A model generated the notes under the pieces. That model saw nothing but the letters and a program-made list of their open reading frames with translations. It ran no database searches and was not told the DNA's origin. 64,000 bases of DNA, taken from IMG/VR virus record IMGVR_UViG_3300024262_006558, positions 1 through 64,000 of that record, one strand, 5' to 3'. Made by a program: the position numbers and the translations under genes. Shown here piece by piece: positions 1-55,400 of the stretch. Position 1 is the first letter of the stretch; the number at the start of each line of letters is the position of its first letter.

Positions 1-429
1 GGATTTCACAAAACAACCTGCCGCTGCTGCAGGTTGTTTTGTGTAATCCTGAGTACTCTGACTTGCTTGCGCAACTGGAGATGCTTCAGAATCATCTTTC
101 TTTCCACCAGGTAGGAATTGAAGGTCACGGATTTTTACTTTGACAGCAGTACGGCTGTTACCGTCTTTGTCATCGTATTTGTCCATTGCTAATGTTCCTT
201 GAACATAAACATTGCTACCCTTCTTAACGTATTGTTCGATTAGACCAGCAAGACCAGCCCAAGCTTCACAATTAAACCAGTGAGTGTTTTGAACTTTCTC
301 ACCTTGTTTGTTTTTGTACTCTTCATTTACAGCAATAGAAAACGTTGCTACTTTGCTGTTTCCAGCTTCTCTGATTACTGGGTCCTGTCCTACAGAACCT
401 CCTAGAGTTACTAAATTGATACCTCTCAT
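1..429 (-). CDS. ssb: Single-stranded DNA-binding protein (3'-partial, runs off window; not in ORF track)
   Basis: Manual translation from ATG at 429: MRGINLVTLGGSVGQDPVIREAGNSKVATFSIAVNEEYKNKQGEKVQNTHWFNCEAW...YVKKGSNVYVQGTL, the typical SSB OB-fold pattern; no stop before position 1. Confidence 0.93.
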   Translation of the reverse strand, partial: MRGINLVTLGGSVGQDPVIREAGNSKVATFSIAVNEEYKNKQGEKVQNTHWFNCEAWAGLAGLIEQYVKKGSNVYVQGTLAMDKYDDKDGNSRTAVKVKIRDLQFLPGGKKDDSEASPVAQASQSTQDYTKQPAAAAGCFVKS

Positions 430-507: not shown

Positions 508-532
508 AAGCGAATTTTTGGTTTTTTCAAGG

Positions 533-540
533 TATTTATA
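533..540 (+). promoter_or_regulatory. Putative late promoter motif TATTTATA
   Basis: 16 nt upstream of ATG 557; same octamer precedes many structural genes. Confidence 0.55.
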
Positions 541-556
541 TAAAAATCTTTTTTAT

Positions 557-3500
557 ATGAATTCGAAAGACAAGAGAGTACTACAAGAGGTACAAAAAAT
601 GCTTTTTTTAGCTGAGACTACCAGAAAAGGTGCTCAAGAAAAGTCTGTTTCAGAGAAGCCAGTTCAAGGCCCTTTTTCAGATTATAAGTCAAGTAGCGAA
701 AAGGACATTCTTCCTTTCCCTATGAAGTACGCTATGGTTAGCAGGGGAGGAGAGAGCTTTAAAGAAGATATGGCTTACGCTTTTCTTTCTTTAAAAGAAG
801 CAGGTAAAAGCACTGAAGAGGCTATTTCTATATTAGCTCCACAATTAAAAGGAGACCAAAACTTTAAAGGGTTTATTCAATCCTTAGAACAAGCGCAAGA
901 ACAATCTGGCATCAAAAGCCCAAATCAAGCCGCAGAACTTATTTTTCAAATCCCTGAGGAAATGAAACAATATGGAGACGCTGCTAAGAAAAGATATTTT
1001 GAACATGCTTTCGGTGATGAAAAAAGTATGATATCATACAACTGGTCTAATGGAAAGCTTTCACCTAGAGGATACTGGCAATTACAATACCTAGCTAGAT
1101 TAGCTTCAGGTAAACCATCTTCTCCAGAAGAAAATGCAATATTATCAAGTAGAAGATCTGACCTATATAAAAGGAGAGCTGAAGACACGTTAAGAAGCTT
1201 CTATAAAAAAGCTATTCTTCCTATAGCTATACCTCTTATGGGTAGAGATGCTAAAGACATTGAAATAGCTGATAGAGATATTGATTTCAAAATTTCTATT
1301 GAAGATGCTGTTGATAAAATGATCGATAACATTGGTCAGTACGATGCTAATAAAAACAACATTGGAGCATGGGCTTTAACTGTAATGAAAAATCAGTTGA
1401 AAGATACCCTTAAGAAATTTACCACTCAAAAGCTTAGGGCTGGAATAGATACTAAATCGGGCATCAGTATTTCTGACGCGTTTGAAAACAACAATTGGAT
1501 AGACTGGAGATCTACTTTAGATCCAGAGACTTCTATGGGAGAAAATGGTGGTATAGATCAAGATGGAATTGCTTCTGTTAAAGAGGTGGCTGAAGGTGTT
1601 TGGAACTATAAATTTAAGTCTCCATCAGAAGCATATATAGAATTTTCTGAAGCTGCAGAGGGTGAGGCAAACAATATATTCAATAAAGGAAATCTTGTAA
1701 AATCTGACATTCAAAAACTAAAAGACGTTGGAGCTTTCTTATCTGTTAAAAAAGATGTTGGCTTTGAAGACCCTGGATCATCTAAACAGCCAGATATAGC
1801 TGATGATTCTAATCAGGATGACAAAGAAAGCATGAGCGATGTAGACGCAAATGAATCTTATGAAGATGTGTTTGAAGAGCTATTATCTGCAGATGAAAAT
1901 CTTGGAGCGCAAATTAAAAATAAGCTTAGCGCTTATTTAAGTAAAAATGGAACAGAAGAAATCGGGAGAGCTATTTTTCACTTCATTCAAGACTTCGATT
2001 ACAAATTCTTTAAAAATAGAGATACGAAAATTAGTAGATCTGATTTTGAAAAAATTGTTTCTGCTGGTAGAGATAAATATGATAAAGATTGGAAAAATTT
2101 TCCAAAAGAAAAGTTTGGACAATCTTTAGGTAAAAAATATACAAATGACGAAGGGGATATCTATCCAGAGTTAGAGCCTTATGTTTTATCTAAGATGGTA
2201 AAAAGAGGTCAAGAAGGTGGCGGATCTGGAGCTGGTACAAAAATATCAAGAGAAGACTTCGAAGCTGATCAAAAAGAAAGAGGAGTTGATGCTCTTAAAA
2301 AAGATCAACTTGACGTTTTAGCTGGAGCTGCTGGTAAAGCGCTTAAAGATGGAGTTGGTAGAAACACTAAACTAGGAAAGACGATTGAAAAACTCTTCAA
2401 TTATGAAAGGGGAAATTTAGATGAAAATATGAATAAGAACTTAAATAGCGTTATTAAAGAAGCAATACAAGAAGTGCTGTCTGAAATGAAGCCAAAAACA
2501 GTTGAGCTAAAGGCTATGTCTAAAGTTAACATGTTAAGGCATATATTAGCTCCAAAGTTAGTAAAAGAAGGCTTTACTGCATCTTCAATAAAGGAAGACT
2601 TCAAAGTTAAAAGTGATGGCTCTTTTGCTGGAAACATAAAGAAAGAATATGAAGATGTTATTTTTGAAAATGTTGGTCTTAAAAAAGTTTATGATTTAAT
2701 AGTTCACAATTTAGGGTCTGCTCACGTTATATCTGAGGCTACTTCTGAAGAATGGTCTTCACACTATAAGGATAGATGGACTGGGGAGGGGGCAAAATGG
2801 CCACTAAGTCAAGAGGAAGTTCAGCAAGTAGAAAATGAAATATCACTTGCCGCTCAAGGCAAATCATCATTTGGAGACCTTTCTAAATGGATGAGAGAAT
2901 ATAATAATGGTAAAGGTTCTAAAAAAATTACATACGCTCTTAATAGAGCGGTAGAGGAATATCAAAAAACTGGTAACTCTAATTTTTATACTTACTTAAT
3001 TACTTTTTATTCAATAGACCCTACTATAAAAGATGGCTATGTTGGTGGTTTAAGAAAAAGGTATGGCTTAGAAACCGTAGATGATGACTCATTGGGTGAA
3101 ATTGTTGATAATGCTATTATGAACAAGATGGAATTAATGATTCAGAATTACAATCCTGCAGACAGTGGCGCTGGAGACTTCTTTTCTTATACATTCGCTC
3201 CAAGAGTTTCTAATATTCTAAGAGATGTACAGACTCAGATAGAAAAGAAGTATGATGAAGACTTAACTGGTGGAGCGTCTAGCAGTGATGATGATGAAAG
3301 ATCTAGCTTAAACAAGCAAGCAGTCGCTCAACATCAATCTGATTCTAGCACCACTTTTTCTGATCAAGCTGATGATTTAAAAAAAGGTGTTTATAACAAT
3401 CTTAAATCAACTGCTGGAGAAGCTGTGGCAAATGCTTATTATGATTACTTTATTAAAGGCGCACCTCAATGGACTGATTTAGTAGAAGATTCTGAAGATT

Positions 3501-4015
3501 GGGAAAGATATGGTATTAGAGGTAGAGGTAAAAACCAACTTGCTAATAAAGTGCTTATGCCTGGATTAGTAAAAAAAGGAATGAACGCTTCTGAAGTTAA
3601 AAAAGATTTCAGCGTAAACAAAGACACTGGAGCTCTAGCTGCAATTCCTAATGATAGAAAAATTGCATATGAAGCAGCAATAGCTGACGATAGAGTTCTT
3701 AAAAGAATCTACGACTTCATAGTTAACGATCAAGACTTAAACTTTAGGGATCCAAATACAGTGCCTTTGAGTTACATATGGAATAAAGGAGCTAATTCTC
3801 CTAATCCTTCTGAAAAAAGTCAGGGATTCATTGGAAACATAGAAGCCATTCTCTCAAAGAAATTCAAAGAGAAGTGGGAGCCAATTATCGCTAAAGTAGA
3901 TGCTAAATATCCAGGTATAGGAAAAGTGCTATTAAGCAATCCTTACAAAGGGCAAGCAACAAAGCCCGTCAGTCATAAAACTGATTGGAGAGCGGATATG
4001 GTTTTCGATAAATAA
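557..4015 (+). CDS. Large hypothetical protein with two sigma-70 region-2-like segments
   Basis: Long ORF; likely start ATG 557 (MNSKDKR). Segments NIGQYDANKNNIGAWALTVMKNQLKDTLKK and QNYNPADSGAGDFFSYTFAPRVSNILRD resemble sigma region 2.3-2.4. Confidence 0.6.
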   Translation: MNSKDKRVLQEVQKMLFLAETTRKGAQEKSVSEKPVQGPFSDYKSSSEKDILPFPMKYAMVSRGGESFKEDMAYAFLSLKEAGKSTEEAISILAPQLKGDQNFKGFIQSLEQAQEQSGIKSPNQAAELIFQIPEEMKQYGDAAKKRYFEHAFGDEKSMISYNWSNGKLSPRGYWQLQYLARLASGKPSSPEENAILSSRRSDLYKRRAEDTLRSFYKKAILPIAIPLMGRDAKDIEIADRDIDFKISIEDAVDKMIDNIGQYDANKNNIGAWALTVMKNQLKDTLKKFTTQKLRAGIDTKSGISISDAFENNNWIDWRSTLDPETSMGENGGIDQDGIASVKEVAEGVWNYKFKSPSEAYIEFSEAAEGEANNIFNKGNLVKSDIQKLKDVGAFLSVKKDVGFEDPGSSKQPDIADDSNQDDKESMSDVDANESYEDVFEELLSADENLGAQIKNKLSAYLSKNGTEEIGRAIFHFIQDFDYKFFKNRDTKISRSDFEKIVSAGRDKYDKDWKNFPKEKFGQSLGKKYTNDEGDIYPELEPYVLSKMVKRGQEGGGSGAGTKISREDFEADQKERGVDALKKDQLDVLAGAAGKALKDGVGRNTKLGKTIEKLFNYERGNLDENMNKNLNSVIKEAIQEVLSEMKPKTVELKAMSKVNMLRHILAPKLVKEGFTASSIKEDFKVKSDGSFAGNIKKEYEDVIFENVGLKKVYDLIVHNLGSAHVISEATSEEWSSHYKDRWTGEGAKWPLSQEEVQQVENEISLAAQGKSSFGDLSKWMREYNNGKGSKKITYALNRAVEEYQKTGNSNFYTYLITFYSIDPTIKDGYVGGLRKRYGLETVDDDSLGEIVDNAIMNKMELMIQNYNPADSGAGDFFSYTFAPRVSNILRDVQTQIEKKYDEDLTGGASSSDDDERSSLNKQAVAQHQSDSSTTFSDQADDLKKGVYNNLKSTAGEAVANAYYDYFIKGAPQWTDLVEDSEDWERYGIRGRGKNQLANKVLMPGLVKKGMNASEVKKDFSVNKDTGALAAIPNDRKIAYEAAIADDRVLKRIYDFIVNDQDLNFRDPNTVPLSYIWNKGANSPNPSEKSQGFIGNIEAILSKKFKEKWEPIIAKVDAKYPGIGKVLLSNPYKGQATKPVSHKTDWRADMVFDK

Positions 4016-4022
4016 TAAAAGT

Positions 4023-4052
4023 AAAAAAGACGGTTTAATCACCGTCTTTTTT
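4023..4052. terminator. Intrinsic terminator hairpin (A-tract and T-tract flanks)
   Basis: AAAAAAGACGGT-TTAATC-ACCGTCTTTTTT just after stop at 4015. Confidence 0.8.
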
Positions 4053-4095: not shown

Positions 4096-4794
4096 ATGAA
4101 AACACTAGATAAAAATTGGTTTTCGGAGGGGTGGATAGACTTTGAGTACAAACAATATATATTGCTTGATTATCTAAAGCAATCAGAAAAGTTTTATCAA
4201 GAAAATAAAATATACCCCTTTTTATCAGATCTACTGGATAGATATAATGAACTTGTGGATTATAAAAATAATCTTAATTCAATAGAAGAGTCATTTCCAA
4301 AAAAGATCATTGGAATAAATCTAAAAAGCAAATCATTCATTTATAAAAGACGAACAAAAAGAGAAATGCCATCTCTTGATGTCATACAGGAAATTGTTGA
4401 TTTTTCTATTTCAGAAATGCAGAAAGTAATTAATAGAGGTAAAGATCTGTATAGAAAATTAGAAGATGGAATAGTTTTTCAATCTGTAGGAACAATTCCT
4501 AATAATAGAGAAGAAGGGTACATATTGGTTAGGTGTCAAAAGAAAGTACACGCTTATAGATATAGATTCTCTATGGTAGAGTCTAGAAACCATCTATCGG
4601 TATTTCCAGTTAGAACTTTCACATCCACCTTAACTAATACTCCAGGTAAAATAAAAGAAAGATTAAAAAGTAGATATCAGGATATATTAAATCCAGCCGT
4701 ATACTACGTGGACATAAATACAGATGCTCCCTTAGAAGAAACTCTTATGCCCATCATAAAGAGACGGTTCACTAAAGATTTTAGAGGACTCTAA
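4096..4794 (+). CDS. Hypothetical protein resembling a conserved Bacteroidota protein
   Basis: Likely start ATG 4096; N-terminus NWFSEGWIDFEYKQYILLDYL...IYPFLSDL recalled as similar to a Bacteroidota conserved hypothetical family (not searched). Confidence 0.6.
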   Translation: MKTLDKNWFSEGWIDFEYKQYILLDYLKQSEKFYQENKIYPFLSDLLDRYNELVDYKNNLNSIEESFPKKIIGINLKSKSFIYKRRTKREMPSLDVIQEIVDFSISEMQKVINRGKDLYRKLEDGIVFQSVGTIPNNREEGYILVRCQKKVHAYRYRFSMVESRNHLSVFPVRTFTSTLTNTPGKIKERLKSRYQDILNPAVYYVDINTDAPLEETLMPIIKRRFTKDFRGL

Positions 4795-9281: not shown

Positions 9282-9596
9282 TTATATCCAATCTCCAAGA
9301 ACTTTTCCTTTTATTTTGCTTAAATCTTGCGTGGAGAATGTTTTAGTTACATTCTCTATAAAATCAAATTCATTAGGATTAACCCAAAAAACAACTCCAG
9401 ACATTTCACCGTCTGAGTTCAAAGTTTCAACCTGATGATCCGATCCATCAACTGAAAGCACCATTAATCTAGCGCCTGAATCAATAACATAACCATCCTT
9501 CATTTCCTTAGAAATGGAAAGCGAGCAGAGAGACACTTGTAGCTCTTGCTCGCTTTCTATGACAGCATTAAAATCAAATTTAATTAATTGAATCAT
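9282..9596 (-). CDS. Hypothetical protein
   Basis: 104-aa ORF overlapping sigma gene end. Confidence 0.6.
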   Translation of the reverse strand: MIQLIKFDFNAVIESEQELQVSLCSLSISKEMKDGYVIDSGARLMVLSVDGSDHQVETLNSDGEMSGVVFWVNPNEFDFIENVTKTFSTQDLSKIKGKVLGDWI

Positions 9597-10437
9597 TTAG
9601 ATATTCTTTTAATCTAGAGCTTTTCCCATGACTTCTAAGCTTCCTTTTGGCCAATTCTTTAATTTGCCTAACTCGCTCATTAGTTAAGCTTAATACGTCA
9701 CCAATCTCTCTTAAAGTTTTTGGCTCATTACCATTTAACCCATAGTACATACTAAGAATATCGGCTTCTCTTTCTGAAAGTTGTTTAAATATACTATTTA
9801 TCTCTGTAGCTAAAGATTCTCTGTTGATAGCGTTCTCCATCTGATCATAAGAATCATTTTGCAAAAAATCTACTAAAGAATATTCTGAATCTTCAGAAAC
9901 TTTATTTTCCAAAGAAACGCTTTTGTTTACATCTGGACTTGAGGATATTACCTCACTCTCTTCTATGCAGGCTTTGTCAATCATCTCTTCCAATGTAGGC
10001 TCTCGACTTAGTTCCTGAACCAGTTTTTCTCTGGCTTTGTTTAATTTGTTTTGCGCGTTTATCTTATTAACGGGCAGTCTAACAGTTTCAGTGTTGTCGT
10101 ATATTGACGCCATTATAGCTTGTCTTATCCACCATACTGCATAAGATAAAAATCTTATATTCTTAGATGCGTCAAACTTATTTATAGCCCTAATCATCCC
10201 TATATTACCTTCATTTATCAGGTCGTTAAGTTCCAATCTATCATTTCTGTACTCTTTAGCTACAGATACAATAAACCTTTGATTGCACTCAATAAGTTTT
10301 TCTCTTGCAATTTCGTCACCATTTTGAGCTAGAACTGCAAGTTCTATTTGCTTATTTGCACTCAATTGGTCAAATTTTCTAATTTCTCTAAAATAATTTT
10401 TTCTAGAAAAAGAATCTTCTTGATCGTTTCTTTCCAT
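9580..10437 (-). CDS. RNA polymerase sigma-70 family factor (RpoD/RpoS-like, regions 1.2-4)
   Basis: NQRFIVSVAKEY, DLINEGNIGMIRAINKFD, FLSYAVWWIRQAI, VRLP, region 4 TLREIGDVLSLTNERVRQIK. Confidence 0.95.
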   Translation of the reverse strand: MERNDQEDSFSRKNYFREIRKFDQLSANKQIELAVLAQNGDEIAREKLIECNQRFIVSVAKEYRNDRLELNDLINEGNIGMIRAINKFDASKNIRFLSYAVWWIRQAIMASIYDNTETVRLPVNKINAQNKLNKAREKLVQELSREPTLEEMIDKACIEESEVISSSPDVNKSVSLENKVSEDSEYSLVDFLQNDSYDQMENAINRESLATEINSIFKQLSEREADILSMYYGLNGNEPKTLREIGDVLSLTNERVRQIKELAKRKLRSHGKSSRLKEYLNDSIN

Positions 10438-45417: not shown

Positions 45418-45705
45418 TTAAAATCTTAATGATAAGTTTATTTGACCTTTTTCTAATAGCTTGCGTCTTTCAATTCGCAATCTACTTATACATGCTGCGC
45501 ATATATGATAGTTTTCTGAATTAGTTAATTCTTCAAAGATCTCAAAGAAACCCCCTTCGCTAGCAAGGCAATGATCGCAACTTTGGAAGTAGTCTCTAGT
45601 ACTGGAATTCGTATAACTATACGGAGATCTAGTGCTTAAGTGAGCTATATCCTTTAAGTTTCTAATTCTTCTTGGGTCGAAATAAAATAGCTTTCTTTGC
45701 CCCAT
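45418..45705 (-). CDS. Hypothetical protein with CxxC...CxxC
   Basis: TAATG stop-start overlap with DnaE-C. Confidence 0.65.
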   Translation of the reverse strand: MGQRKLFYFDPRRIRNLKDIAHLSTRSPYSYTNSSTRDYFQSCDHCLASEGGFFEIFEELTNSENYHICAACISRLRIERRKLLEKGQINLSLRF

Positions 45706-48092
45706 TACATTTGAGCAACCTCATCTATAGAAATCTGTTTTTTTCCACCAACTTCTTTCTTTCCAAAATTTAAAAACCCTGCATCATTCTTTTCTATCCT
45801 AGCTAGGTAAACACTATTCTTTTTCATGGACTTATAAAATATCTCAGCATCTTTACCAAACATCCTTAGAACTGTGTCCTTTACCCCGTCAGACACTTTA
45901 AGCACAAGCATGTTCTTACCGCCTTTAGTAGCGTCCATTCTTTTAGATTGTAAAATGAAATAGTAATCATCAACATCAACATATTCATTGATACTACTTA
46001 TCTCTCTACCCGCAGATTCAGTTATGATCTGTTTTATTTCTGTAGCTTTTTTGATATATGCTAAATCAACTCCGCACACATCCATAAACTCTTTATTCTT
46101 TTCAATATCGGTAGTCGCTACATAAGTATCCTCATTTGGCTTCAATTCTGATTCATAACTAGACGCTGAGAACAAGGTTAATTGTTTTGGATCAGCCTTC
46201 TTTCTCTTCTTTTTCTTAGCAAATAAATCACATAATTCTTCACGAGAATGAGACCAATCATCAAACACACCAGCTTTAACTGAGGCTTCGTATGGAGTCT
46301 TGCCAAACTTGCTAAAGTTAGCATCAAAGAAATGATATTTGGACACCGATTTAAAGTTAGTTTCTTTCTGAATTTTAAGAACTTCATTTAAATCACTATA
46401 TGCCGCATCACCCATACCATTAATCGCAGATAATCCCATTGATATTTCTTTTTCATCCGTAGTAGCCCATCTCCAAGAAGATTTTCTAGAAGGAGGTAGA
46501 ATATCTATACCTTTAGCTATAGCTGAAGATATTGCAGCATTTAACCATTCACGCTCCTTATCTTTACCTCCATTTGTCTTAGGGTGATTCAATAAAGAAG
46601 TGTAAAACTCTACTGGGTAATAATGTTTTAAATACAATGTTTGCATTGCCAAATAAGCATATGAAAGGGAGTGAGACTTGTTAAATGAATATCCTAAATA
46701 CTCGATCATCCATTCTTTAATCTTCTCTAAAGATTTTTCATCCATACCATTCTTAAGAGATCCATCCAAGAACATGTTCCAGTACTTTAAAAACCCTTTG
46801 TATGCTTTATTATCTTTTTCCTCTTCACTCAACGGAGGTCCCATAAACTCTCCATTTTCACCTTTCTTTCTAGAGGCTAAATCTTTCTGAATTAACTTAC
46901 TCGCCTTATCCATCGCACGTCTAAGTAAATCACCTTCACCTAAACTCATTCCAGCAAATTGATTTGCTATAAACATTACTTGCTCTTGGAAGATAAGTAC
47001 GCCATTACTTTCTGACAATATAGGCTCCAACCAAGGGTGTATATACTTAATCTCAGATGGAGCAAATTTATTTTTTATGTATTCACGATCAGCTCCGATA
47101 CCCATTGGACCTGGTCTAAATAACGCATTGGCCGCAACAAGTTCAGAAAACTTATCGATTCTTATCCCTTTAATCAATGAGTTCATACCAGCGGATTCAA
47201 ACTGAAAAATACCATGATTTAACCCAAGTCTCAACTCCTTATATAAATTAGCGTCTTCAATGTCAACATGATCCACTTTTTCCTGAACTTCTTTAAAGGT
47301 TTCTTCACCGTACTTAATCCGTATCAAATCAATAGCGTCCTTAATTACATTTAAAGTTTCAATCTTAAGACGGTCAAGCTTTAATATTCCTAAAGTTGAT
47401 AAATCCTTACCTGACTTGTCGGCCTCTTGAAAGGCCGTCACGATAGAATTCTCCTCACCCTTAGGCTTTGCTATAATATTAGTTGGAACATAGTTATAGC
47501 ATGGCCCTGGAGTTATTACAAGACCTGCCGCGTGCTGCCCTATACCTCTAATTTGCCCTTGAAGTTTAAGCGTGTGCTCTAATATGATCGCGTTCTCTGG
47601 ATCTGTCAACCAAGCCTTAACCCTAGTGCTGCACCCTGGATGTTCTGGATATTCCGTTAACCACTCTTCAAAAGAATCGTAATCTCCCAAACTTCCGCCC
47701 ATCTCTTTGGTGACCTGAAAAACTTCAGATTCAAAACCAGATGCTTCAGTTCCTTGATGAGCTTTTGTTACATCTTTAATACATCCTTTTTCATTGAATG
47801 TAGAGAATGTCCCTACGTTAAGTACTCTGTTTCTACCATACTTTTCATATAATATCTCATTCGTGACATGGTCTGTACCATTCATGAAGTCAATATCGAT
47901 GTCTGGCGGACTATTGTGTACTAAAATAGCCGTTTTTAAGCTGTTTTCACCGTTTTCTCCATTATTTATAAAGTCGATATCTATACAGTTTTTTGATGTT
48001 CCATAAAATAGATGGTCTTCATCAAAGGAAAGGTCATACACTTTACCTGAGTAATCGACTTTTCTAATATGTTTTATTTTACTTTTTTGCAT
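45705..48092 (-). CDS. dnaE: DNA polymerase III alpha, C-terminal half, preceded by 60-aa split-intein C part
   Basis: After VHN: SPPDIDIDF catalytic motif, GQHAAG, LKLDRL, GIFQFES, LIFQEQVM, GYSFNKSHS. Confidence 0.95.
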   Translation of the reverse strand: MQKSKIKHIRKVDYSGKVYDLSFDEDHLFYGTSKNCIDIDFINNGENGENSLKTAILVHNSPPDIDIDFMNGTDHVTNEILYEKYGRNRVLNVGTFSTFNEKGCIKDVTKAHQGTEASGFESEVFQVTKEMGGSLGDYDSFEEWLTEYPEHPGCSTRVKAWLTDPENAIILEHTLKLQGQIRGIGQHAAGLVITPGPCYNYVPTNIIAKPKGEENSIVTAFQEADKSGKDLSTLGILKLDRLKIETLNVIKDAIDLIRIKYGEETFKEVQEKVDHVDIEDANLYKELRLGLNHGIFQFESAGMNSLIKGIRIDKFSELVAANALFRPGPMGIGADREYIKNKFAPSEIKYIHPWLEPILSESNGVLIFQEQVMFIANQFAGMSLGEGDLLRRAMDKASKLIQKDLASRKKGENGEFMGPPLSEEEKDNKAYKGFLKYWNMFLDGSLKNGMDEKSLEKIKEWMIEYLGYSFNKSHSLSYAYLAMQTLYLKHYYPVEFYTSLLNHPKTNGGKDKEREWLNAAISSAIAKGIDILPPSRKSSWRWATTDEKEISMGLSAINGMGDAAYSDLNEVLKIQKETNFKSVSKYHFFDANFSKFGKTPYEASVKAGVFDDWSHSREELCDLFAKKKKRKKADPKQLTLFSASSYESELKPNEDTYVATTDIEKNKEFMDVCGVDLAYIKKATEIKQIITESAGREISSINEYVDVDDYYFILQSKRMDATKGGKNMLVLKVSDGVKDTVLRMFGKDAEIFYKSMKKNSVYLARIEKNDAGFLNFGKKEVGGKKQISIDEVAQM
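47913..48092 (-). mobile_element. Split intein C-terminal part (IntC, 60 aa)
   Basis: Own ATG; block F VYDLSFDEDHLFY; block G ILVHN followed by Ser+1. Confidence 0.92.
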
Positions 48093-49140
48093 CTATAATT
48101 CTTTTAACTCTATCTATAACTAACTTCTGATTATCTTTCCAGTCTTTTTCCCAAATCTCAACGTAAGTACAGCTATATTCTTTCTCTATCAAAGATACCT
48201 TTACCTCTTCTTCTTTCCAAATGTCTTGAGCTATCTTTTTTTTATGCTTATGAAAATAATCATGACTATAAATATCTGGATTGCAATGCCAATAATCCCC
48301 TTGAATCTCTATTACTATATTATATTCTTTATTAAAAAAGTCTACTCTATAATTCCTTTTAGTGTCATAATTAATAAAGTTCGCCTGTTTATTTCCTGAT
48401 GCGTAATAAAATGAATCTTTAATTTCAGGAATCTTAACCAATTCTTTTACTACTTGTATTTCCAGATTTGAAACTCCTCCAGAAAAATTTGCTCTATTTT
48501 CATTTTGCCATTCATCAGAGTAAAACAAATTCTCAACCCCATATTTTATCATCATAGAATCGGTTACTGCTGAATAGTGAGAGCCTCTATTTAGAAATGA
48601 ATCATGACCGTATCTCTCATTCATGGTGGAAACAATCTTTTTATGTATATTTGGAGATTGTATTGGAGCCCTTAACCCAGTTGTGCCTAAGTTTTTATTT
48701 AAAGTCTTTCCGTATTTTTCTCTATACTCTTTTGTTTTATAATAAAGCGACTTGTATTCCTTTTCTCTAAGAGGGTGCCCTAATTCATAGAAATACTTCC
48801 CTCCTCTAGCTGGGTGTAGCTCTAAAACACTTTCCTTATCCAGGAATTTATCATAGTACTTAACTTTTAAATTAGAAAGACTTTCAAGTGACCCATCTTC
48901 CATCTGAAGTTTAATAACCCATCTCCCTCTATGTTTTGCATGAACCACAGAATCGACTGTATCTCCAGAGATCGTTTCCAATCCAATAAATGATGAAAGT
49001 GACACATTTAGAGGTGTCTTATATTTCCATATGTCTAAATCAGCCTGAGTTGGATCTATAAAGCCATAAAACTCTTTTATAGCTTTGTCTAGATCTTTTT
49101 TGGTGTCAAAATTATTACTTAGTAAATATTCTTTTGTCAT
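48079..49140 (-). CDS. Free-standing Vsr/DUF559-like (putative homing) endonuclease between the dnaE halves
   Basis: RYG/KYGVEN repeats; SNLE...VDFF...IEIQGDYWHCNP...EIWEKDW. Confidence 0.85.
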   Translation of the reverse strand: MTKEYLLSNNFDTKKDLDKAIKEFYGFIDPTQADLDIWKYKTPLNVSLSSFIGLETISGDTVDSVVHAKHRGRWVIKLQMEDGSLESLSNLKVKYYDKFLDKESVLELHPARGGKYFYELGHPLREKEYKSLYYKTKEYREKYGKTLNKNLGTTGLRAPIQSPNIHKKIVSTMNERYGHDSFLNRGSHYSAVTDSMMIKYGVENLFYSDEWQNENRANFSGGVSNLEIQVVKELVKIPEIKDSFYYASGNKQANFINYDTKRNYRVDFFNKEYNIVIEIQGDYWHCNPDIYSHDYFHKHKKKIAQDIWKEEEVKVSLIEKEYSCTYVEIWEKDWKDNQKLVIDRVKRIIDAKK

Positions 49141-49155
49141 AATGAAATCTTTATC

Positions 49156-49182
49156 TATAAATAGGTAAGGATTTTATAAATA
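49156..49182 (-). promoter_or_regulatory. Two tandem TATTTATA motifs upstream of the endonuclease
   Basis: Copies at 49156-49163 and 49175-49182. Confidence 0.55.
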
Positions 49183-49500
49183 TTAAATTTTGGGAATGCC
49201 TTTCCATAATTTAACATTTACAAACTCTCTATTTTGATCTTGGAATGATTCTGTCAGTGAGTTATAGTAACACATTTCAACTGTTATGTATTCATCTCCT
49301 ATATTGGCTCCTAAAACATCTTCTTGATACACTCTTTTTACTACACATAGAAAACTACCTTGATACGATCCGTTATCAATAAGTTCACCTTCTTCATTTA
49401 AACCATCCAATGGTATGTGTGTTTTAAAATTCTCCCACTTATCCATAGAAGTAGAAGTTGTGTTTATTTTATCTGGTTCTCTAATTTCAAATTTTTCCAT
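49183..49500 (-). CDS. Hypothetical passenger protein inside fractured dnaE
   Basis: 105-aa ORF, no nuclease or intein motifs seen. Confidence 0.7.
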   Translation of the reverse strand: MEKFEIREPDKINTTSTSMDKWENFKTHIPLDGLNEEGELIDNGSYQGSFLCVVKRVYQEDVLGANIGDEYITVEMCYYNSLTESFQDQNREFVNVKLWKGIPKI

Positions 49501-49563
49501 TTTAAAATTTCAATTTATCTGATATGAACCCTTTTTTAGACCCAACTAATTCTTGAATAAATT

Positions 49564-51765
49564 TTATTTAACAAACAAAATATCAGTTTCTAAAATATCA
49601 TCCACCCTTATCTCCATTCTTTCACCCTCTCTTTCTACGGGAACTATATGATTACCAGTTAACTTAATTACAGCACCATCCTCTGTTTCTATTTCATAAA
49701 CAGATTCATCCGCCCCAATCTCTCTCACATGCATCTGAACTAACTCTCCTTTACCTGTTGATGTTTCTACTGGATCACCTACTTCAAGGTCTACCACGCT
49801 TTTATAAGTGCCATCTTTCATCAAAACTGTACAGTCATCAGTAAGGCAATCTCTAGATGGATTCAAGAAACGCTCGAAATATAAATCAAACCTAATTGGA
49901 TCAATCTTAATAATATCAAGGCACCAAGAGAGCAAGCTTCCTGCGGCAGATCCACGCGCAGGACCGATGTCATATCCCCTCTTTCTATATTCTCTAATTA
50001 TCTCCCAATTAACCAAGAAATAATCAAGCATCTTCTTTGACTCAATTACTTCAAGCTCATACTCTAATCTATCAAAGTACTCCTTCATTTTCTCTTCAGT
50101 CATTTCAACTATACCACTCTTTTTATAGTAGCCTAGTTTTTGTTTTAATTTAGCATGAGCTAATTTAGTTATTATACCTTTAGTGGTAGTTTCCTTGAAG
50201 TAATCTAAAACATCTTGAGTAGGTTCGTATTGAGGATATTTCTCAACACCAATTTCGAAATCATAATTACATTTACTAGCAATCTCTAAAGTGTTATCTA
50301 AACATATATTAACAAAACTCTCAGGATAGTTGAAATCTCTATCAGAATTTAGTTTTTGGAAATCAGCGCGTCTAAAATAGTACATCTTTCTATTCTCTTT
50401 CAAGAAAGCATTATCTATAGACGTTCTCTGTTTGATAGATGTGACTACATCTTGCAAAACAGCATCTTCCTCTTTAGGGTAGAAAGTGTCATTTGTAAGT
50501 ATTGGCTTTACATTGTAATACTTCATCATTTTAATCATGAATACATTGTAAGCTCTTTGTTGAGAAGAACCGTTAAATTGTAATTCAATATAAAAATCTT
50601 CCCCAAACTCTTTTTCAAACTTCTGAAACAACTGTTCAGCTTTTCTTTCTTCACCCCTTTGTACTAAGTGGGAGAATACGCTATCCTCGGAAGAAGTTGT
50701 AACTATTAAACCTTCTTTGTGCTTAAGTAACCATTCAGTTTTAATTCTACCTTTTTGGTAATAACCTTCAGTGTTCGCCTTATAAAGAAGTAGATTCAGA
50801 TTTTTATAACCTTCTTCATTCTTTATATATATTTTTTGCTTAAATGATTCCCCTTGAGCTCTTCCCTCTTCTACATCACCAATTTTCTCATTAAGATAAA
50901 GGTCTATTCCTAATATAGGTTTTATACCAGCCTCTTTACATGCTTGGTAAAATTCGAAAGTACCAGACATTGTAGAGGAATCGGTGATAGCCATAGACTC
51001 ATGACCATACTCCTTTGCTATCTTAATGTAATCTTTAACTGATCCAGCCCCCTCAAGTATAGAGTGGAATGTATGTAAGCATAGTGGAACAATTGGGCGC
51101 TCTCCGCCTTCGGATTCTTTTTTGTCGGCTTTTTCAAGCATCTCTTGAAGAGATGCTTCAACATCAACTTCTTCGTAATCTCCTGAATAATTAAACCAAC
51201 CGATCTCTTGAAGCTTGAAGAAACATTTAGCTAACGCCTCAACATCTACAAGTGCATCATGGGCATCTTGGAAAGCTGTATTAAATAGTTTTAAATATAA
51301 CTCACTTAAAGTAGGCCATTTATATCCACCACCTCTCTTTTTGGGAACCTTACAGAAATCTACAGTAGTGTTTTTTGTACATATATGCCTAATCTTCTGT
51401 ACAAAATTAGGCATACCTAAACGAGTATACTCACATCCCACAATTTTTTCATCAAAAGAAATATTGTGAGCAATAAGATATCTAGACCCTTGAAGATCTT
51501 CCGAGAACATATTAAGAGCTACTTCTAGATCTATACCTTCTTGTTCTGCTCTCTCTGTTGTGACCCTGTGTATATTGGACGCTTCTATCGGTATTGTATA
51601 ACCATCAGGCCTGATAACAATGCTTTCAGTTTTTATACAATTATAATCCTTATCATAAACCTTCCATGCAATTTGGACCATTCTTGGCCAATTGTCAAAG
51701 TCAGTTAATGGAGCGTTATATTTTTTTGGAAGACCTGTAGTCTCCGTATCAAATACTATATACAT
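49564..51765 (-). CDS. dnaE: DNA polymerase III alpha, N-terminal half (DEDDh exonuclease plus PHP), followed by 94-aa split-intein N part
   Basis: MYIVFDTETTGLPK, AHNISFD, HDALVDV; PHP CLHTFHSILEG...MAITD; GPARGSAAGSLLSWCL...FERFLNPSRD then CLTDD. Confidence 0.95.
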   Translation of the reverse strand: MYIVFDTETTGLPKKYNAPLTDFDNWPRMVQIAWKVYDKDYNCIKTESIVIRPDGYTIPIEASNIHRVTTERAEQEGIDLEVALNMFSEDLQGSRYLIAHNISFDEKIVGCEYTRLGMPNFVQKIRHICTKNTTVDFCKVPKKRGGGYKWPTLSELYLKLFNTAFQDAHDALVDVEALAKCFFKLQEIGWFNYSGDYEEVDVEASLQEMLEKADKKESEGGERPIVPLCLHTFHSILEGAGSVKDYIKIAKEYGHESMAITDSSTMSGTFEFYQACKEAGIKPILGIDLYLNEKIGDVEEGRAQGESFKQKIYIKNEEGYKNLNLLLYKANTEGYYQKGRIKTEWLLKHKEGLIVTTSSEDSVFSHLVQRGEERKAEQLFQKFEKEFGEDFYIELQFNGSSQQRAYNVFMIKMMKYYNVKPILTNDTFYPKEEDAVLQDVVTSIKQRTSIDNAFLKENRKMYYFRRADFQKLNSDRDFNYPESFVNICLDNTLEIASKCNYDFEIGVEKYPQYEPTQDVLDYFKETTTKGIITKLAHAKLKQKLGYYKKSGIVEMTEEKMKEYFDRLEYELEVIESKKMLDYFLVNWEIIREYRKRGYDIGPARGSAAGSLLSWCLDIIKIDPIRFDLYFERFLNPSRDCLTDDCTVLMKDGTYKSVVDLEVGDPVETSTGKGELVQMHVREIGADESVYEIETEDGAVIKLTGNHIVPVEREGERMEIRVDDILETDILFVK
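49567..49848 (-). mobile_element. Split intein N-terminal part (IntN, 94 aa)
   Basis: Cys1 CLTDDCTVLMKDG block A; block B KLTGNHIV; ends ETDILFVK-stop. Confidence 0.92.
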
Positions 51766-52229: not shown

Positions 52230-52469
52230 TCAATAGTCATTTTCACTATCTTGCCTCTGACATAAAATCCCTTTTCTTAAATCTTCACAAAGCTTTCTAA
52301 CCTCATTAATCTTACCCCTAGCTCTTATACTAGCTCGTCTACCTGTTTTGGATCTCAAGAATTTAGTGACATCCGCATCGGCGGAGTCAACTAATTCCTT
52401 TAAGTATTCCCAGTTTTGTCTGATTTCATAAAAATCAGTTTCCACTATTTCTTTCTTAGGCCTCCCCAT
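52230..52469 (-). CDS. Histone H1-like Hc1 family protein
   Basis: Likely start MGRPKKE at 52469; LKELVDSADADVTKF...ASIRARGKINEVRKLCEDLRK matches the Hc1-family pattern. Confidence 0.7.
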   Translation of the reverse strand: MGRPKKEIVETDFYEIRQNWEYLKELVDSADADVTKFLRSKTGRRASIRARGKINEVRKLCEDLRKGILCQRQDSENDY

Positions 52470-55400
52470 CGTCTCTTTTGAATGAAGATTTTTCCCCCTT
52501 AAGCTTGTTGATAGAATCAAGCCTGTCCATAACATCTCTAGCTTTATTAGCTATTTGCTCACTTTCTTTTTGAAGTTTACCGTCTGATATTTCAATTTCC
52601 TCAATTTCTTGAATCACTCTCTTCTTTGCAGGCTTTTTCTTAACAACCTCGAACTCTCCTTCAGACTCAGTTTCAACTTCATTTTCTTGAGACTTTATTC
52701 TTTCATCTATTCTATTAATCATTCCACTCATTTTTCTACTAGCAGCAGATATCAAAATGTGATTTTCAAACAGTTTATTCTCTTTACTTATATCGTTTTC
52801 CTCTTCACCTTTTAAAGTGTGCTCCATAAGTTCTTCGTAGAAATTGTCAAATCTATCATCGGAAGCTTTTAGCAATTTATGAAGTCTGCCTCTCTTTATT
52901 TCAGCTAAGTCTCCAACAGGCTCTTCAGTTGGGCCATCATCTATTCCAGCCGCTCCAAGATCTGCTCCTAAATCACCTTCCAGATCACCACCTCCAGCAG
53001 CATCTAAATCACCGTCTAAATCATCGATGCCAGCATCCATTCCCCCTCCAGCAATATCCCCGTCAAATCCGCCTCCGAATCCTCCAGCTCCACCGTCACC
53101 AAGACCTTCCTCGCCTCCTTCTCCAGGAGTCTGTATAGCCGCATGAGGGTTTTCATACTTTTTATCAAGATCTTTAAATAACCCGATTTTCTTATATGAT
53201 TCCGCTGCAGATTCAATTTCCATGAATAGTTTCTTCTCAACTTTCTTCTGCTTCAAGATAAGTTTGATCTCTTCTTTAGAGAATCCCATAACATTCTCCA
53301 TAGCCCATGTATATGAAGCTGGAGACATTCCTTCTGGAGTAAACATTTGAGAGAAAACTTCTAACTTAGATTTCCACGTCTCCATGTTCAACAATACTTG
53401 TTGAGTAGAAGGGTTAGTAAGTTGCAAATCGAAATTATCTATATCATCTTCAAACCCTAAGAATAATAAGTGAATATTAGCTATTCTTCTTAATTCCATC
53501 AACACACACTCCTGTATCATGTTAATAGTTCTTGCGAACCTTAAATCAGATTGAGACAATAAACTTCCACCTGGAATAGATTCCGTGTAGTTCAAATAAG
53601 GTTTTGGAACCTTAATTGCAGCAAACAATTTATTTTGAAGATATTCAATATCCATGATATCACCAAGATTTGTTGCCCCTGGTAAAGTATCAATCTTTGA
53701 AGACTTATCTCCCCTAACTGGTATGAAGTAATCTTCTTCAACACTAGGGGGGTTGTATTTTCTATTTGAGTTTCCGTTTCTTGAATCTACGACTGGCTGT
53801 CTTTTAAGACGAGTTTTGATATCTTCAATATATTGTAAAACGTCAGCATCATCTATGTTTCCTACATCAATGTAGAACACTCTACGTTCTGGAGCTCTAA
53901 CAATACGATATACAAGCATTGCATCTTCTGCAAGCTGTAATTGTTTCCAAAGTTTTCTAGCTGGATCTAATACCGATCTACCATAAGGTAATCTACGAGT
54001 GTCTTCAAGTAATCTGAAATGGGCAATTTGCCAATCTTCAAATATCATTCCTTGAGTGTCCCATCTGAATCTGGTTCTTCCTGGCTCACCTTCAACGCCT
54101 TCTTCTCTATGAATTTCTTCAGAAGGCAAGGCTAGTACATCAAAAATACCATATTCTTTATCAATGTGTAAATGTAAAAAGAAATCTCCATATTTACACA
54201 AATCTCTAATCCACAACCTCATGTTAAATTCAACATTCAATCGTTTCTTAAGAAGATCATTCAACACTTCTTTAACTCTTTTGTTAGGGGAGAAGATCTC
54301 AAGGATATTACCTCTCTCATTTCTGGTCAAGCAATTGTGAGTGAAAACACCAGTTCCATTTGAGGTTAGAATGGCGAAATTATGATGCTCGCCCACATTA
54401 ACTAAATCATAAGTCTTCCTTTTACCAACAAACTCAACAGATTTAATTGAATGGTTTGTCGCAGACACAAAATTGGTCCAATTTTTATATTCAGATCTTG
54501 ACAATAAGCCTTCAATTTCTTTTCTAGAAATATCATTATCTCTACAAATTTTAGATAAATTTGGCCTTTCACCTTGTGAAGAAAGATATAAACTCTTTAT
54601 ATAATTTAATCTTTCTTTTTTAGAATTATATTTTTTTACAAAATCAGTCCATTTGCCATATCCATTTTTCTCAAGATATGTATTAACCTTTTTTGGTCTC
54701 CAATTAAAATCATCACATATTTTTGACATATTATTCTCAAGAATAATTTGTCCTAAATAATTTTCACACGCTCCCTCTATTGCTTGTATAGATATTTTGC
54801 TATTGTGAAACCCTAAATCCTCCCACCTTTGTAAATTTAAAGATTTATATACTTTTGATTTATACAGAATTCTTCTAGTAGTTCCAAGAATCTCACAAGC
54901 CTCTTCGACTGTTGATGAATTATTATACGCTTGCAATAATTCATGAATAGAAAATTCTCTTTTTTTATCATGAAGATATCTTCCATTTTTTTCTCCAGAC
55001 AATCTATACCCTTTACCATACATAGGGTTTTCTTTTCCTGAATAACCAAATAAATCTTTTAATTCTTCTTGAGAATAATTTGAGTATTTTCTTTTTTGTC
55101 TGTCAGAAATTTCTTGGACTCTTTTAGATCTCCATTCTGGATCGCTCCAATATGGACCTGAAGAAGAATTTGTTTCAGAAAACACTTTTTTCATCTTATC
55201 TGAATAACTCTTGTCATTTTTCCACCTGTCAGAATTAAGAGAGCTATGAAGCTTTTGGTGATCAAACCAATCCATGACCTGAAGATTGGATGGATCATTA
55301 TTTAGTTTATTAAAATCCTTATGGTGAACAACTCCTTTTTTCTCTCCCCAAAGACTACGTTTAACAATTCTATGCGTATATTCCCATTTACCATCTTCAA

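What the first reader, a model, noticed from the sequence alone, without database searches (positions are those of the whole stretch)
557..4015. Giant late-type protein with two sigma-factor region-2-like domains
Seen: two separate segments with the sigma-70 region 2 signature. About 1190-1423 (FYKKAILPIAIPLMGR...IEDAVDKMIDNIGQYDANKNNIGAWALTVMKNQLKDTLKK) is ECF-like; about 3000-3240 (IMNKMELMIQNYNPADSGAGDFFSYTFAPRVSNILRD) is group-3-like. After the second comes a segment (VYNNLKST...ANAYYDYFIKGAPQWTDLVE) weakly reminiscent of region 4. The gene is counter-oriented, has TATTTATA upstream, and carries a VIKEAIQEVLSE motif like the presumed head proteins. Inference: a virion-packaged multi-sigma protein ejected with the DNA to redirect host RNA polymerase, or a sigma decoy. 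I know of no described phage protein with this architecture.
Basis: partly seen in the sequence, partly recalled or inferred. Interest (0 to 1): 0.75.

Follow-up and report, generated by a model that had tools for sequence, protein, structure and literature searches.

The report
Fused double sigma-like phage protein
A 1152-residue protein of an uncultivated huge phage, probably of Bacteroidota, is a natural fusion of two neighbouring sigma-factor-like genes and so carries two sigma region-2 domains; it is most likely a new kind of phage factor that redirects the host RNA polymerase, and nothing shows that it is packed in the virion.

Summary
Window 557-4015 (+) is one intact 1152-aa gene.

- **First sigma region-2 domain (aa ~155-300):** Pfam Sigma70_r2 gives E 7e-5. 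18 of 28 relatives hit the same model. Every fold match that covers this stretch is a sigma region-2 domain.
- **Second domain (aa ~771-905):** more degenerate, supported by profile-profile comparison, by sigma70-ECF hits in relatives at the same position, and by fold matches led by pro-sigmaK.

In most relatives, all from huge-phage metagenome contigs, the locus is two tightly coupled genes. Gene 1 has an N-terminal module plus sigma2. Gene 2 is a divergent ECF-type sigma, and one homologue passes the curated NCBIfam and Pfam region-4 cut-offs. The window's protein is their fusion, joined near aa 628. VIKEAIQEVLSE is the old N-terminal helix of gene 2, not a motif shared with head proteins.

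The gene has its own TATTTATA element, which it shares with the terminase, tail-fibre-like and endolysin genes, and its own terminator. The phage has three ordinary sigma genes and no detectable RNA polymerase.

Best reading: a phage specificity factor for host RNA polymerase. Virion packaging, a decoy role and a region 4 in this protein remain untested or unsupported. The RNA polymerase docking prediction gave no answer.

The parts
515..540 (+). Promoter-like element: T-rich tract (515-527) followed by TATTTATA (533-540), 24 nt before the ATG. No -35-like element.
   Evidence: 24 genes of the genome carry TATTTATA 19-30 nt before their ATG, with consensus tttt..a.C TATTTATA AaAAAA. The same T-tract plus TATTTAT(A/T) precedes gene 1 in nearly all relatives.
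557..4015 (+). Intact coding sequence of the 1152-aa double sigma-like protein (P0001).
   Evidence: ORF listing and translation. Full-length relatives at 82% and 52% identity come from independent samples.
557..1018 (+). N-terminal family-specific region (aa 1-154). Conserved motifs include FPMKYAM. No known domain.
   Evidence: Conserved across the 28 family representatives. No Pfam, PHROGs or atlas lead.
1019..1456 (+). Sigma region 1.2/2-like domain no. 1 (aa 155-300). The Pfam core is aa 254-287 (nt 1316-1417).
   Evidence: Pfam E 7.4e-5. TIGR02952 E 1.7e-3. 18 of 28 relatives hit Sigma70_r2. ECF sigma hits in the PDB. 21 of the top 50 VIA matches are sigma region-2 domains, and all of them cover this range.
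1457..2437 (+). Remainder of the ancestral gene-1 part (aa 301-627): a conserved post-sigma2 segment (STLDPE..GENGGID, YKFKSP, LKDVGAFLSVKK), an acidic linker (aa ~400-445) and a helical region. Function unknown.
   Evidence: Family alignments. No domain hits.
2438..2491 (+). Fusion joint (aa 628-645): NLNSVIKEAIQEVLSEM is the conserved N-terminal helix of the ancestral gene 2.
   Evidence: The motif aligns with the N-termini of separate gene-2 proteins of all clades. A motif HMM hits only this protein in the genome, E 3e-6, with the next best at 0.03.
2492..2725 (+). Internal duplicate (aa ~646-723; by alignment, aa 613-718) of the C-terminal module. Absent from the 52%-identical homologue P0003.
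   Evidence: Smith-Waterman score 108 against 47 +/- 7 for shuffles. Gap in P0003.
2867..3271 (+). Sigma region-2-like domain no. 2 (aa 771-905), degenerate. It derives from the sigma2 of the ancestral ECF-type gene 2.
3272..3370 (+). Acidic, Ser-rich linker (aa 906-938) at the position of sigma region 3.2. The SLDxPLGDxG motif of relatives is degenerate here.
   Evidence: Alignment A5. Weak match of DSSTTFSDQAD to region 3.2 of the phage's RpoD-like sigma, E 0.13.
3371..3763 (+). Confidently folded C-terminal module (aa 939-1069; second copy of the repeat) at the position where relatives have sigma region 4. The fold is not identified.
   Evidence: pLDDT 82-93. No profile similarity to region 4. 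Language-model neighbours are mostly Sigma70_r4 clusters, score 0.74, a lead only. Homologue L030 gene 2 has Sigma70_r4_2 above the cut-off.
3764..4015 (+). C-terminal tail (aa 1070-1152) with the conserved KYPGIGKVLL motif, then the stop codon.
   Evidence: Alignments. Low model confidence.
4023..4052 (.). Symmetrical hairpin flanked by an A-run and a T-run: a terminator-like site 8 nt after the stop codon.
   Evidence: Terminator scan and sequence.
4096..4794 (+). Conserved 232-aa companion ORF on the same strand. Function unknown. It may or may not belong to the system.
   Evidence: 34% identical homologue in the same relative position in L011, E 5e-43. A 232-aa ORF also follows the gene in L010. 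No domain hits.

Best explanation
The protein is a natural fusion of two adjacent, translationally coupled phage genes that both descend from sigma-70-family factors.

- **Gene-1 part (aa 1-627):** a family-specific N-terminal region followed by a complete region 1.2/2-like domain.
- **Gene-2 part (aa 628-1152):** a degenerate ECF-type sigma with a sigma2-like domain, a linker at the place of region 3.2, and a C-terminal module at the place of region 4. An extra copy of that module is inserted near the joint.

I infer, but have not shown, that the two halves work together as a phage-specific promoter-specificity factor. At least one sigma2-like domain would dock on the beta-prime clamp helices of the host (probably Bacteroidota) RNA polymerase core. 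It would then open an AT-rich, -10-only promoter. The best candidate is the TATTTATA class, which precedes this gene itself (as with self-regulated ECF sigma genes) and the terminase, tail-fibre-like and endolysin genes.

Shown: the sigma ancestry of both halves, the fusion and split history, the conserved synteny and the promoter class. Inferred: RNA polymerase binding, the promoter assignment and the timing.
For: Sigma2 no. 1.

Sigma2 no. 2 and homology to gene 2.

Gene 2 is a true sigma-family member in relatives:
- L030 gene 2 hits TIGR02937 at 45.2 bits against a cut-off of 42.9, covering profile positions 21-157 of 165.
- The same protein hits Sigma70_r4_2 at 27.0 bits against a cut-off of 25.7.
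- L013 gene 2 hits Sigma70_r2 at E 9e-4.
- Clade-C gene 2 is collinear with the phage's own ECF-like sigma from region 2 to region 4, hhalign E 8e-5.

Split versus fused forms:
- Gene 1 and gene 2 are adjacent or overlap by 1-4 nt in 10 loci.
- They are fused in P0001, P0002, P0003, P0005, P0014 and P0019.
- L016 gene 2 equals P0019 aa 672-1024, E 6e-61.

Genome context:
- No beta or beta-prime genes and no DFDGD motif in the 388-kb record, so transcription should depend on host RNA polymerase.
- The phage's RpoD-like sigma is closest to Bacteroidota sigma factors, 42-45% identity.

Promoter class:
- TATTTATA precedes gene 1 in almost all relatives.
- In this genome it also precedes the terminase, tail-fibre-like and endolysin genes.

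Conservation: residues of the sigma 2.3/2.4 surface (G270, W272, N279, D283) are invariant or nearly so in the family.
Against: - No test of RNA polymerase binding succeeded; the docking job gave 'no answer'.
- This protein's own Sigma70_r2 score is just below Pfam's cut-off, and its second sigma2 gets no direct HMM hit.
- No region 4 can be detected in it.
- The phage already has three canonical sigma genes. Any of them could serve the TATTTATA promoters.
- The link between this protein and that promoter class rests only on its own upstream region.
- A sigma needed for late promoters would normally be made before them.
Confidence: 0.5

Rival explanations
1. Virion-packaged, ejected sigma. The protein is made late, packed into the capsid and injected with the DNA. 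It then directs host RNA polymerase to the unusual early promoters.
For: - The gene carries the promoter class shared with the terminase, tail-fibre-like and endolysin genes.
- The phage has no RNA polymerase of its own.
- About 34 small genes at 230-274 kb carry a highly conserved ~40-bp bipartite promoter-like unit. It does not resemble the Bacteroidota consensus and contains two similar GTAyATAwT elements about 20 bp apart.
Against: - There is no structural-module context. Synteny is with SSB, helicase, exonuclease and sigma70 in all relatives.
- The supposed head-protein motif is not shared with any other protein.
- No virion proteomics or RNA data exist.
- Large size and late-type promoter are the only support.
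Confidence: 0.12
2. Sigma decoy or host shut-off factor. One or both sigma2-like domains occupy the beta-prime clamp helices, or bind a host or phage sigma, without supporting initiation. This would block host transcription or hand the polymerase over to the phage's canonical sigma factors.
For: - The second sigma-like half is degenerate in this protein, with no detectable region 3.2 or region 4.
- There are weak Rsd/AlgQ (anti-sigma) hits in gene 1 of a relative: E 3.6e-3 in NCBIfam and 7e-3 in Pfam.
- Precedent: phiEco32 gp79 displaces host sigma and stabilises the phage sigma (PMC12276001).
Against: - The DNA-facing sigma 2.3/2.4 residues are the most conserved part of the family. A pure decoy would not need them.
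- Gene 2 of relatives is a complete ECF-type sigma.
Confidence: 0.15
3. Replication-linked role. The sigma2-like domains are reused as DNA-melting or single-strand-binding modules of a replication initiator or organiser, not as RNA polymerase partners.
For: Strictly conserved divergent arrangement with the SSB gene, inside a replication and nucleotide-metabolism block.
Against: - No replication-type domain (primase, helicase, initiator) is detected.
- Gene 2 relatives pass sigma-family cut-offs, including region 4, which contacts the polymerase flap.
- A canonical sigma gene is part of the same conserved block.
Confidence: 0.08
4. The sigma resemblance is a chance feature of a helical, low-complexity giant protein.
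For: - Individual E-values for this protein are modest.
- Foldseek E-values are around 1.
Against: Independent lines agree on the same residues:
- 18 of 28 relatives hit Sigma70_r2.
- Curated cut-offs are passed in L030.
- Profile-profile links connect all clades.
- Sigma factors dominate three separate fold searches.
Confidence: 0.03

Closest known systems
ECF-type (group 4) sigma-70 family factors (TIGR02937; Pfam Sigma70_r2 plus Sigma70_r4_2)
   Same: - Both sigma2-like segments match ECF-type models best.
- The family motif NFGAWAFTVAKNxxID mirrors the ECF region 2.3/2.4 motif.
- Gene 2 of relative L030 passes the curated cut-offs from region 2 to region 4.
- The gene sits behind a conserved promoter-like element of its own, as self-regulated ECF sigma genes do.
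   Different: - 1152 aa instead of about 170-200.
- Two region-2 domains in one chain.
- Long family-specific N-terminal, middle and C-terminal regions.
- No detectable region 4 in this protein.
- The candidate promoter has no -35 element.
- No anti-sigma partner was recognised.
Phage T4 gp55 late sigma (with gp33 and the gp45 clamp)
   Same: - A phage sigma reduced to region 2 that recognises an 8-bp AT-rich -10-only late promoter. T4's is TATAAATA (my own knowledge); here the candidate is TATTTATA, with no -35.
   Different: - No sequence relationship was shown.
- gp55 is about 185 aa with one sigma2.
- No gp33 or clamp dependence was examined.
- The link between this protein and the TATTTATA promoters is inferred only.
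Two-part sigma systems: Bacillus subtilis SigO-RsoA and phage SPO1 gp33/gp34 (from my own knowledge; SigO-RsoA is mentioned in PMC7826278 and PMC10141391)
   Same: Two sigma-derived or sigma-associated polypeptides are encoded side by side and presumed to act together. The split and fused forms found here are the classic sign of interacting partners.
   Different: - Here both partners carry a region-2 domain, rather than dividing regions 2 and 4 between them.
- Both are several times larger.
- No homology to those systems was tested or found.
phiEco32 gp36 (ECF-like phage sigma) with gp79 co-factor (PMC12276001)
   Same: - A phage ECF-like sigma works with a second phage protein that displaces host sigma and stabilises the phage sigma on host RNA polymerase.
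   Different: - gp79 is a small protein and not sigma-like.
- There is no sequence similarity.
- No fusion is known.

Membership tests
Sigma-70 family (ECF-type) | Region 2 domain recognised by the family model above its curated score | tested here: inconclusive
   - Domain 1 of this protein scores 22.9 bits against the Pfam cut-off of 24, E 7.4e-5.
- 18 of 28 relatives hit the model at E < 0.01, best 1.6e-7.
- Domain 2 has no direct hit in this protein, but E 1.5e-8 (TIGR02937) at the aligned position of fused relative P0005.
Sigma-70 family (ECF-type) | Region 4 helix-turn-helix C-terminal to region 2 | tested here: not met
   - No Pfam or NCBIfam region-4 hit in this protein.
- hhalign of aa 929-1074 against region 4 of relatives and of canonical sigma factors found nothing.
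- Leads only: language-model neighbours are mostly Sigma70_r4 clusters, score 0.74.
- Homologue L030 gene 2 does pass Sigma70_r4_2, 27.0 against 25.7 bits.
Sigma-70 family (ECF-type) | Collinear region 2 - linker (3.2) - region 4 in one compact unit | tested here: inconclusive
   - Met in relatives: L030 gene 2 hits TIGR02937 over its cut-off, covering profile positions 21-157 of 165.
- An SLDxPLGDxG linker motif is present in clades B and C and in P0005.
- In this protein the linker motif is degenerate and region 4 is undetected.
Sigma-70 family (ECF-type) | Binds RNA polymerase core (beta-prime clamp helices) and confers promoter-specific initiation | tested here: inconclusive
   Docking aa 150-300 on Bacteroides thetaiotaomicron beta-prime 1-420 returned 'no answer', score 0.00. 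By the tool's own statement this is neither support nor evidence against. Initiation cannot be tested with these tools.
T4 gp55-type late sigma | Small region-2-only protein that recognises a -10-only late promoter with the help of a co-activator and the sliding clamp | tested here: inconclusive
   - A -10-only AT-rich promoter class exists and precedes late-function genes.
- Size and architecture differ.
- Co-activator and clamp dependence were not tested.
Virion-packaged ejected proteins (polyvalent or internal proteins) | Encoded in or with the structural module, and present in virions | tested here: not met
   - Genomic context is replication and nucleotide metabolism in all relatives.
- No motif is shared with other proteins of the genome.
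- Presence in virions is not testable with these tools.
Two-part sigma factor | Two sigma-derived polypeptides encoded together and acting as one factor | tested here: inconclusive
   - Adjacent or overlapping genes in 10 loci, and fused forms in at least six proteins, fit interacting partners.
- Joint function was not tested.

The most novel reading that the evidence does not exclude
The gene-1/gene-2 pair, here fused, is a previously unknown kind of sigma built from two region-2 modules. It is the lineage's own specificity factor for the -35-less TATTTATA promoters of late genes in huge Bacteroidota phages, a functional counterpart of T4 gp55/gp33 that arose independently from ECF-type sigma factors. 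A bolder variant holds that the two region-2 modules read the two similar GTAyATAwT elements of the bipartite early promoters after delivery with the virion.
Probability: 0.25. Interest if true: 0.8.

Novelty: new variant of a known kind. Interest (0 to 1): 0.65.

Why it matters
Huge phages that lack their own RNA polymerase must reprogram the host enzyme. How they do so in Bacteroidota, whose promoters and primary sigma are unusual, is essentially unknown.

This locus defines an unannotated, lineage-wide family. It has about 28 sequence clusters, all from metagenomic contigs, the longest of 372-494 kb, and none in 185,000 species genomes. It comprises a large sigma2-bearing protein plus a divergent ECF-type sigma, repeatedly fused into one chain with two region-2 domains. 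No described sigma has two.

If it binds RNA polymerase, it would show a new way of building promoter specificity. It would also provide matching promoter sets: the TATTTATA class and a 40-bp early unit. These could serve for in vitro work and as orthogonal parts for Bacteroidota genetics.

Tried and rejected
- **Sequence searches that found nothing.** tblastn against 50,697 phage records: no match. Profile of close homologues against PDB sequences: no match.
- **Homologue searches with poor yield.** A word-indexed search with the N-terminal alignment recovered only one known member. IMG/VR held one related locus. 185,579 species genomes held none.
- **No paralogue in the genome**.
- **Full-length AlphaFold2 model with 3 sequences was poor**, pLDDT 41. 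The C-half model with 14 sequences was moderate, pLDDT 60, and the second sigma2 region stayed at low confidence.
- **Foldseek against PDB, BFVD and AFDB clusters gave nothing below E 0.5.** Sigma factors were over-represented among the top rows.
- **RNA polymerase docking: no answer**.
- **Region 4 in this protein:** rejected at the level of profile comparison.
- **VIKEAIQEVLSE as a shared (head-protein) motif:** rejected.
- **A phage-encoded multisubunit RNA polymerase:** not found by Pfam models or by the DFDGD motif. About 105 kb of the parent contig could not be read.
- **Expression data:** only the source subsurface metagenome and one soil run hold the sequence, and there are no RNA runs.
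- **Weak single hits set aside as noise:** MrpR_N_CB, phrog_7222, vRNAP_dom in L016 gene 2, and Rsd/AlgQ in P0008.
Full report
**What is there.** The window is the first 64 kb of a 388,594-bp IMG/VR virus record. That record was cut from a 494,080-bp metagenome contig that begins at the same base. The source is a subsurface metagenome. G+C is about 35%, and almost all genes in the window are on the minus strand.

The finding is a single intact ORF, ATG 557 to stop 4015, 1152 aa, on the + strand. Its surroundings are:
- **Upstream, divergent:** an SSB gene, cut by the contig end.
- **Downstream:** a hairpin terminator-like site at 4023-4052, then a conserved 232-aa ORF of unknown function at 4096-4794.
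- **Further downstream, minus strand:** genes for a NUDIX hydrolase, a UvrD-type helicase, an exonuclease, a canonical 285-aa RpoD-like sigma factor and ribonucleotide reductase.

**The first sigma-like segment is real.**
- Pfam finds Sigma70_r2 at aa 254-287, E 7.4e-5 and 22.9 bits, just under the gathering score of 24. NCBIfam finds the BldN-type ECF model at aa 252-291, E 1.7e-3.
- An exhaustive phmmer search of 1.84 billion representatives found only 28 related clusters. They share the N-terminal ~430 residues.
- Scanned one by one, 18 of the 28 hit Sigma70_r2, best E 1.6e-7.
- A profile of the family hits, among natural PDB proteins, only ECF sigma factors (RpoE, BldN, SigL), and always at region 2.2-2.4.
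- The family alignment is collinear with regions 1.2 to 2.4. Its most conserved residues (G270, W272, N279, D283) sit in the region 2.3/2.4 motif NFGAWAFTVAKNxxID.

**The protein is a fusion of two genes.** Genomic neighbourhoods of family members show the same synteny everywhere. These sit on contigs of up to 372-494 kb. A ClpB-like ATPase and SSB lie on one strand. One or two genes follow on the other strand. NUDIX, UvrD helicase, exonuclease and sigma70 follow on the first strand again.

- In ten loci there are two genes, adjacent or overlapping by 1-4 nt. Gene 1 is 650-910 aa and gene 2 is 430-700 aa.
- In P0001, P0002, P0003, P0005, P0014 and P0019 the two are one ORF.
- Gene 2 of L016 matches aa 672-1024 of the fused P0019 at E 6e-61.
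- The split gene 2 of L011 (P0029) matches aa 776-1059 of the window's protein.
- The N-terminal helix of separate gene-2 proteins, of the type EQLRKIIRKTLLExYL, aligns with aa 628-645 of the window's protein.
- That motif occurs in no other protein of the genome. The supposed link to head proteins therefore falls.

**Gene 2 is a divergent ECF-type sigma, and it carries the second sigma-like segment.**
- L030 gene 2 passes NCBIfam TIGR02937 (sigma70-ECF) at 45.2 bits against a cut-off of 42.9, covering profile positions 21-157 of 165. It also passes Pfam Sigma70_r4_2 at 27.0 against 25.7 bits.
- L013 gene 2 hits Sigma70_r2 (E 9e-4) and TIGR02937 (E 4.7e-5).
- Clade-C gene 2 aligns collinearly with the phage's own ECF-like sigma from region 2 to region 4, hhalign E 8e-5.
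- After the sigma2 part, most relatives carry SLDxPLGDxG. This resembles the region 3.2 motif of sigma-70 as I know it.
- For the window's protein, aa 750-926 align with clade-C gene 2 at E 7.5e-7, probability 92%.
- The profile of sigma2 no. 1 aligns with aa 842-904 at E 4.9e-5.
- The aligned columns of fused relative P0005 hit TIGR02937 at E 1.5e-8.
- Foldseek found nothing significant in PDB, BFVD or AFDB. Sigma factors nevertheless stood out among the top rows, with five of the first 25 AFDB clusters.

It is ECF-like rather than group-3-like.

**Region 4 is not established in this protein.**
- The C-terminal module (aa 939-1069) is confidently folded, pLDDT 82-93. It sits where relatives have region 4.
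- It is duplicated: aa 613-718 resemble aa 933-1058, with score 108 against 47 +/- 7 for shuffles. The first copy is missing in P0003.
- Profile comparison finds no similarity to region 4.
- A language-model neighbour search returned mostly Sigma70_r4 clusters, but at a score (0.74) that the tool rates as a lead only.

**Promoter context.** Upstream regions of the genome show at least three motif classes.

- **(a) TATTTATA class.** The motif lies 19-30 nt before the ATG of 24 genes, all within 0-200 kb. A T-rich tract precedes it and there is no -35. Members include this gene (533-540), the terminase large subunit, two tail-fibre-like genes and an endolysin.
- **(b) Bipartite early-type unit.** About 40 bp long, AGTACATAaTaTCCCC-N6-GTATATATTggTGAAtc, in front of about 34 small genes at 230-274 kb.
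- **(c) Bacteroidota-type TAnnTTTG elements.** They are found in front of DNA polymerase genes and other genes, and are concentrated at 280-360 kb.

The T-tract plus TATTTAT(A/T) also precedes gene 1 in nearly all relatives. 'Late-type' is therefore a fair description of the promoter class. Timing itself is inferred.

**Transcription machinery.**
- The record has three canonical sigma genes: 9580-10437, 215581-216444 and 267937-268515.
- It has no beta or beta-prime domain hit and no DFDGD motif.
- The RpoD-like sigma is closest to the short primary sigma factors of Bacteroidota, 42-45% identity, and Bacteroidota make up most of the best 80 hits. This supports a Bacteroidota host.

**Mechanism.** The best-supported reading is that the two halves, partners elsewhere and fused here, form a phage-specific factor for the host RNA polymerase. 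At least one sigma2-like domain would bind the beta-prime clamp helices and open an AT-rich -10-only promoter. The TATTTATA class is the obvious candidate, because the gene itself sits behind it, as self-regulated ECF sigma genes do. This is inference. My one docking attempt (B. thetaiotaomicron beta-prime 1-420 with aa 150-300) returned 'no answer' and must not be counted either way.

The rivals, scored in their own section, are:
- a decoy or hand-over factor, with phiEco32 gp79 as precedent (PMC12276001);
- a replication-linked DNA-melting protein;
- chance resemblance.

**Novelty.** No cluster member carries a name beyond 'hypothetical protein'. The family is absent from the phage GenBank set and from the species genomes. 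The papers I could search describe jumbo-phage sigma factors only as minimal or RpoD-like forms (PMC7824862). I rate it a new variant of a known kind: sigma-70-family ancestry with an undescribed architecture and gene-pair organisation.

Noticed in passing
G000 230,000-274,000 (outside the window), + strand: About 34 small genes (60-300 aa) are each preceded by the same ~40-bp bipartite unit, AGTACATA(A/G)T(A/T)TCCCC-N6-GTATATATTGGTGAATC. It ends about 13 nt before the ATG. This looks like a dense early-gene block with a phage-specific promoter. The two halves share a GTAyATAwT core about 20 bp apart.
   Followed up: partly
window 533-540 and 23 other sites within G000 0-200 kb (e.g. upstream of 57885, 33030, 36363, 38868, 66493): A -35-less promoter-like class, T-tract + TATTTATA + A-rich, lies 19-30 nt before start codons. 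It precedes the terminase, tail-fibre-like and endolysin genes and several giant unknown genes (1362, 1093, 582 aa). It is absent from 200-388 kb.
   Followed up: partly
window 45705-51765 (-): The DNA polymerase seems split into two genes. 49564-51765 matches phrog_405 positions 18-442, and 45705-48092 matches positions 441-748. They are separated by a 105-aa ORF and a 353-aa DUF7487 gene that has two TATTTATA elements of its own. This may be an inserted mobile gene.
   Followed up: no
window 52456-56097 (-): The 1213-aa portal protein gene carries an HNH endonuclease domain (aa ~236-300) N-terminal to the portal domain (aa 620-966).
   Followed up: no
window 4096-4794 (+): A 232-aa ORF of unknown function follows the giant gene on the same strand. 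It is conserved in the same position in relatives L010 and L011 (34% identity, E 5e-43). It has a TATTTAT-like element just upstream.
   Followed up: partly
window 1-429 (-) and record ends: The SSB gene runs off the start of the window, which is also base 1 of the 494-kb parent contig. Relatives continue upstream with more phage genes, including a ClpB-like ATPase. The IMG/VR label 'provirus' (388 of 494 kb kept) may be a trimming artefact for a phage larger than 388 kb. The remaining 105 kb could not be read.
   Followed up: partly
G000 9580-10437 (-), 215581-216444 (+), 267937-268515 (+): There are three canonical sigma genes, two RpoD-like (285 and 287 aa) and one ECF-like (192 aa). The ECF-like gene lies within the 230-274 kb early-type block, so it may be an early product that switches on a later class.
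   Followed up: partly
L015 (relative, 372-kb contig), gene 1 protein P0008 aa 680-747: There are weak hits to the anti-sigma Rsd/AlgQ family (NCBIfam 'sigma D regulator' E 3.6e-3; a Pfam Rsd_AlgQ hit, E 7e-3, in one unidentified family member) in the C-terminal part of a clade-B gene 1. This is a lead that gene 1 might hold a sigma region 4.
   Followed up: no
L021, L022, L027, L029 (relatives), gene 2: Clade-B gene-2 proteins carry the same amphipathic helix motif at both ends: N-terminal EQLRKIIRKTLLExYL and C-terminal EARKIIRNTLISEYLKK. Its function is unknown.
   Followed up: no
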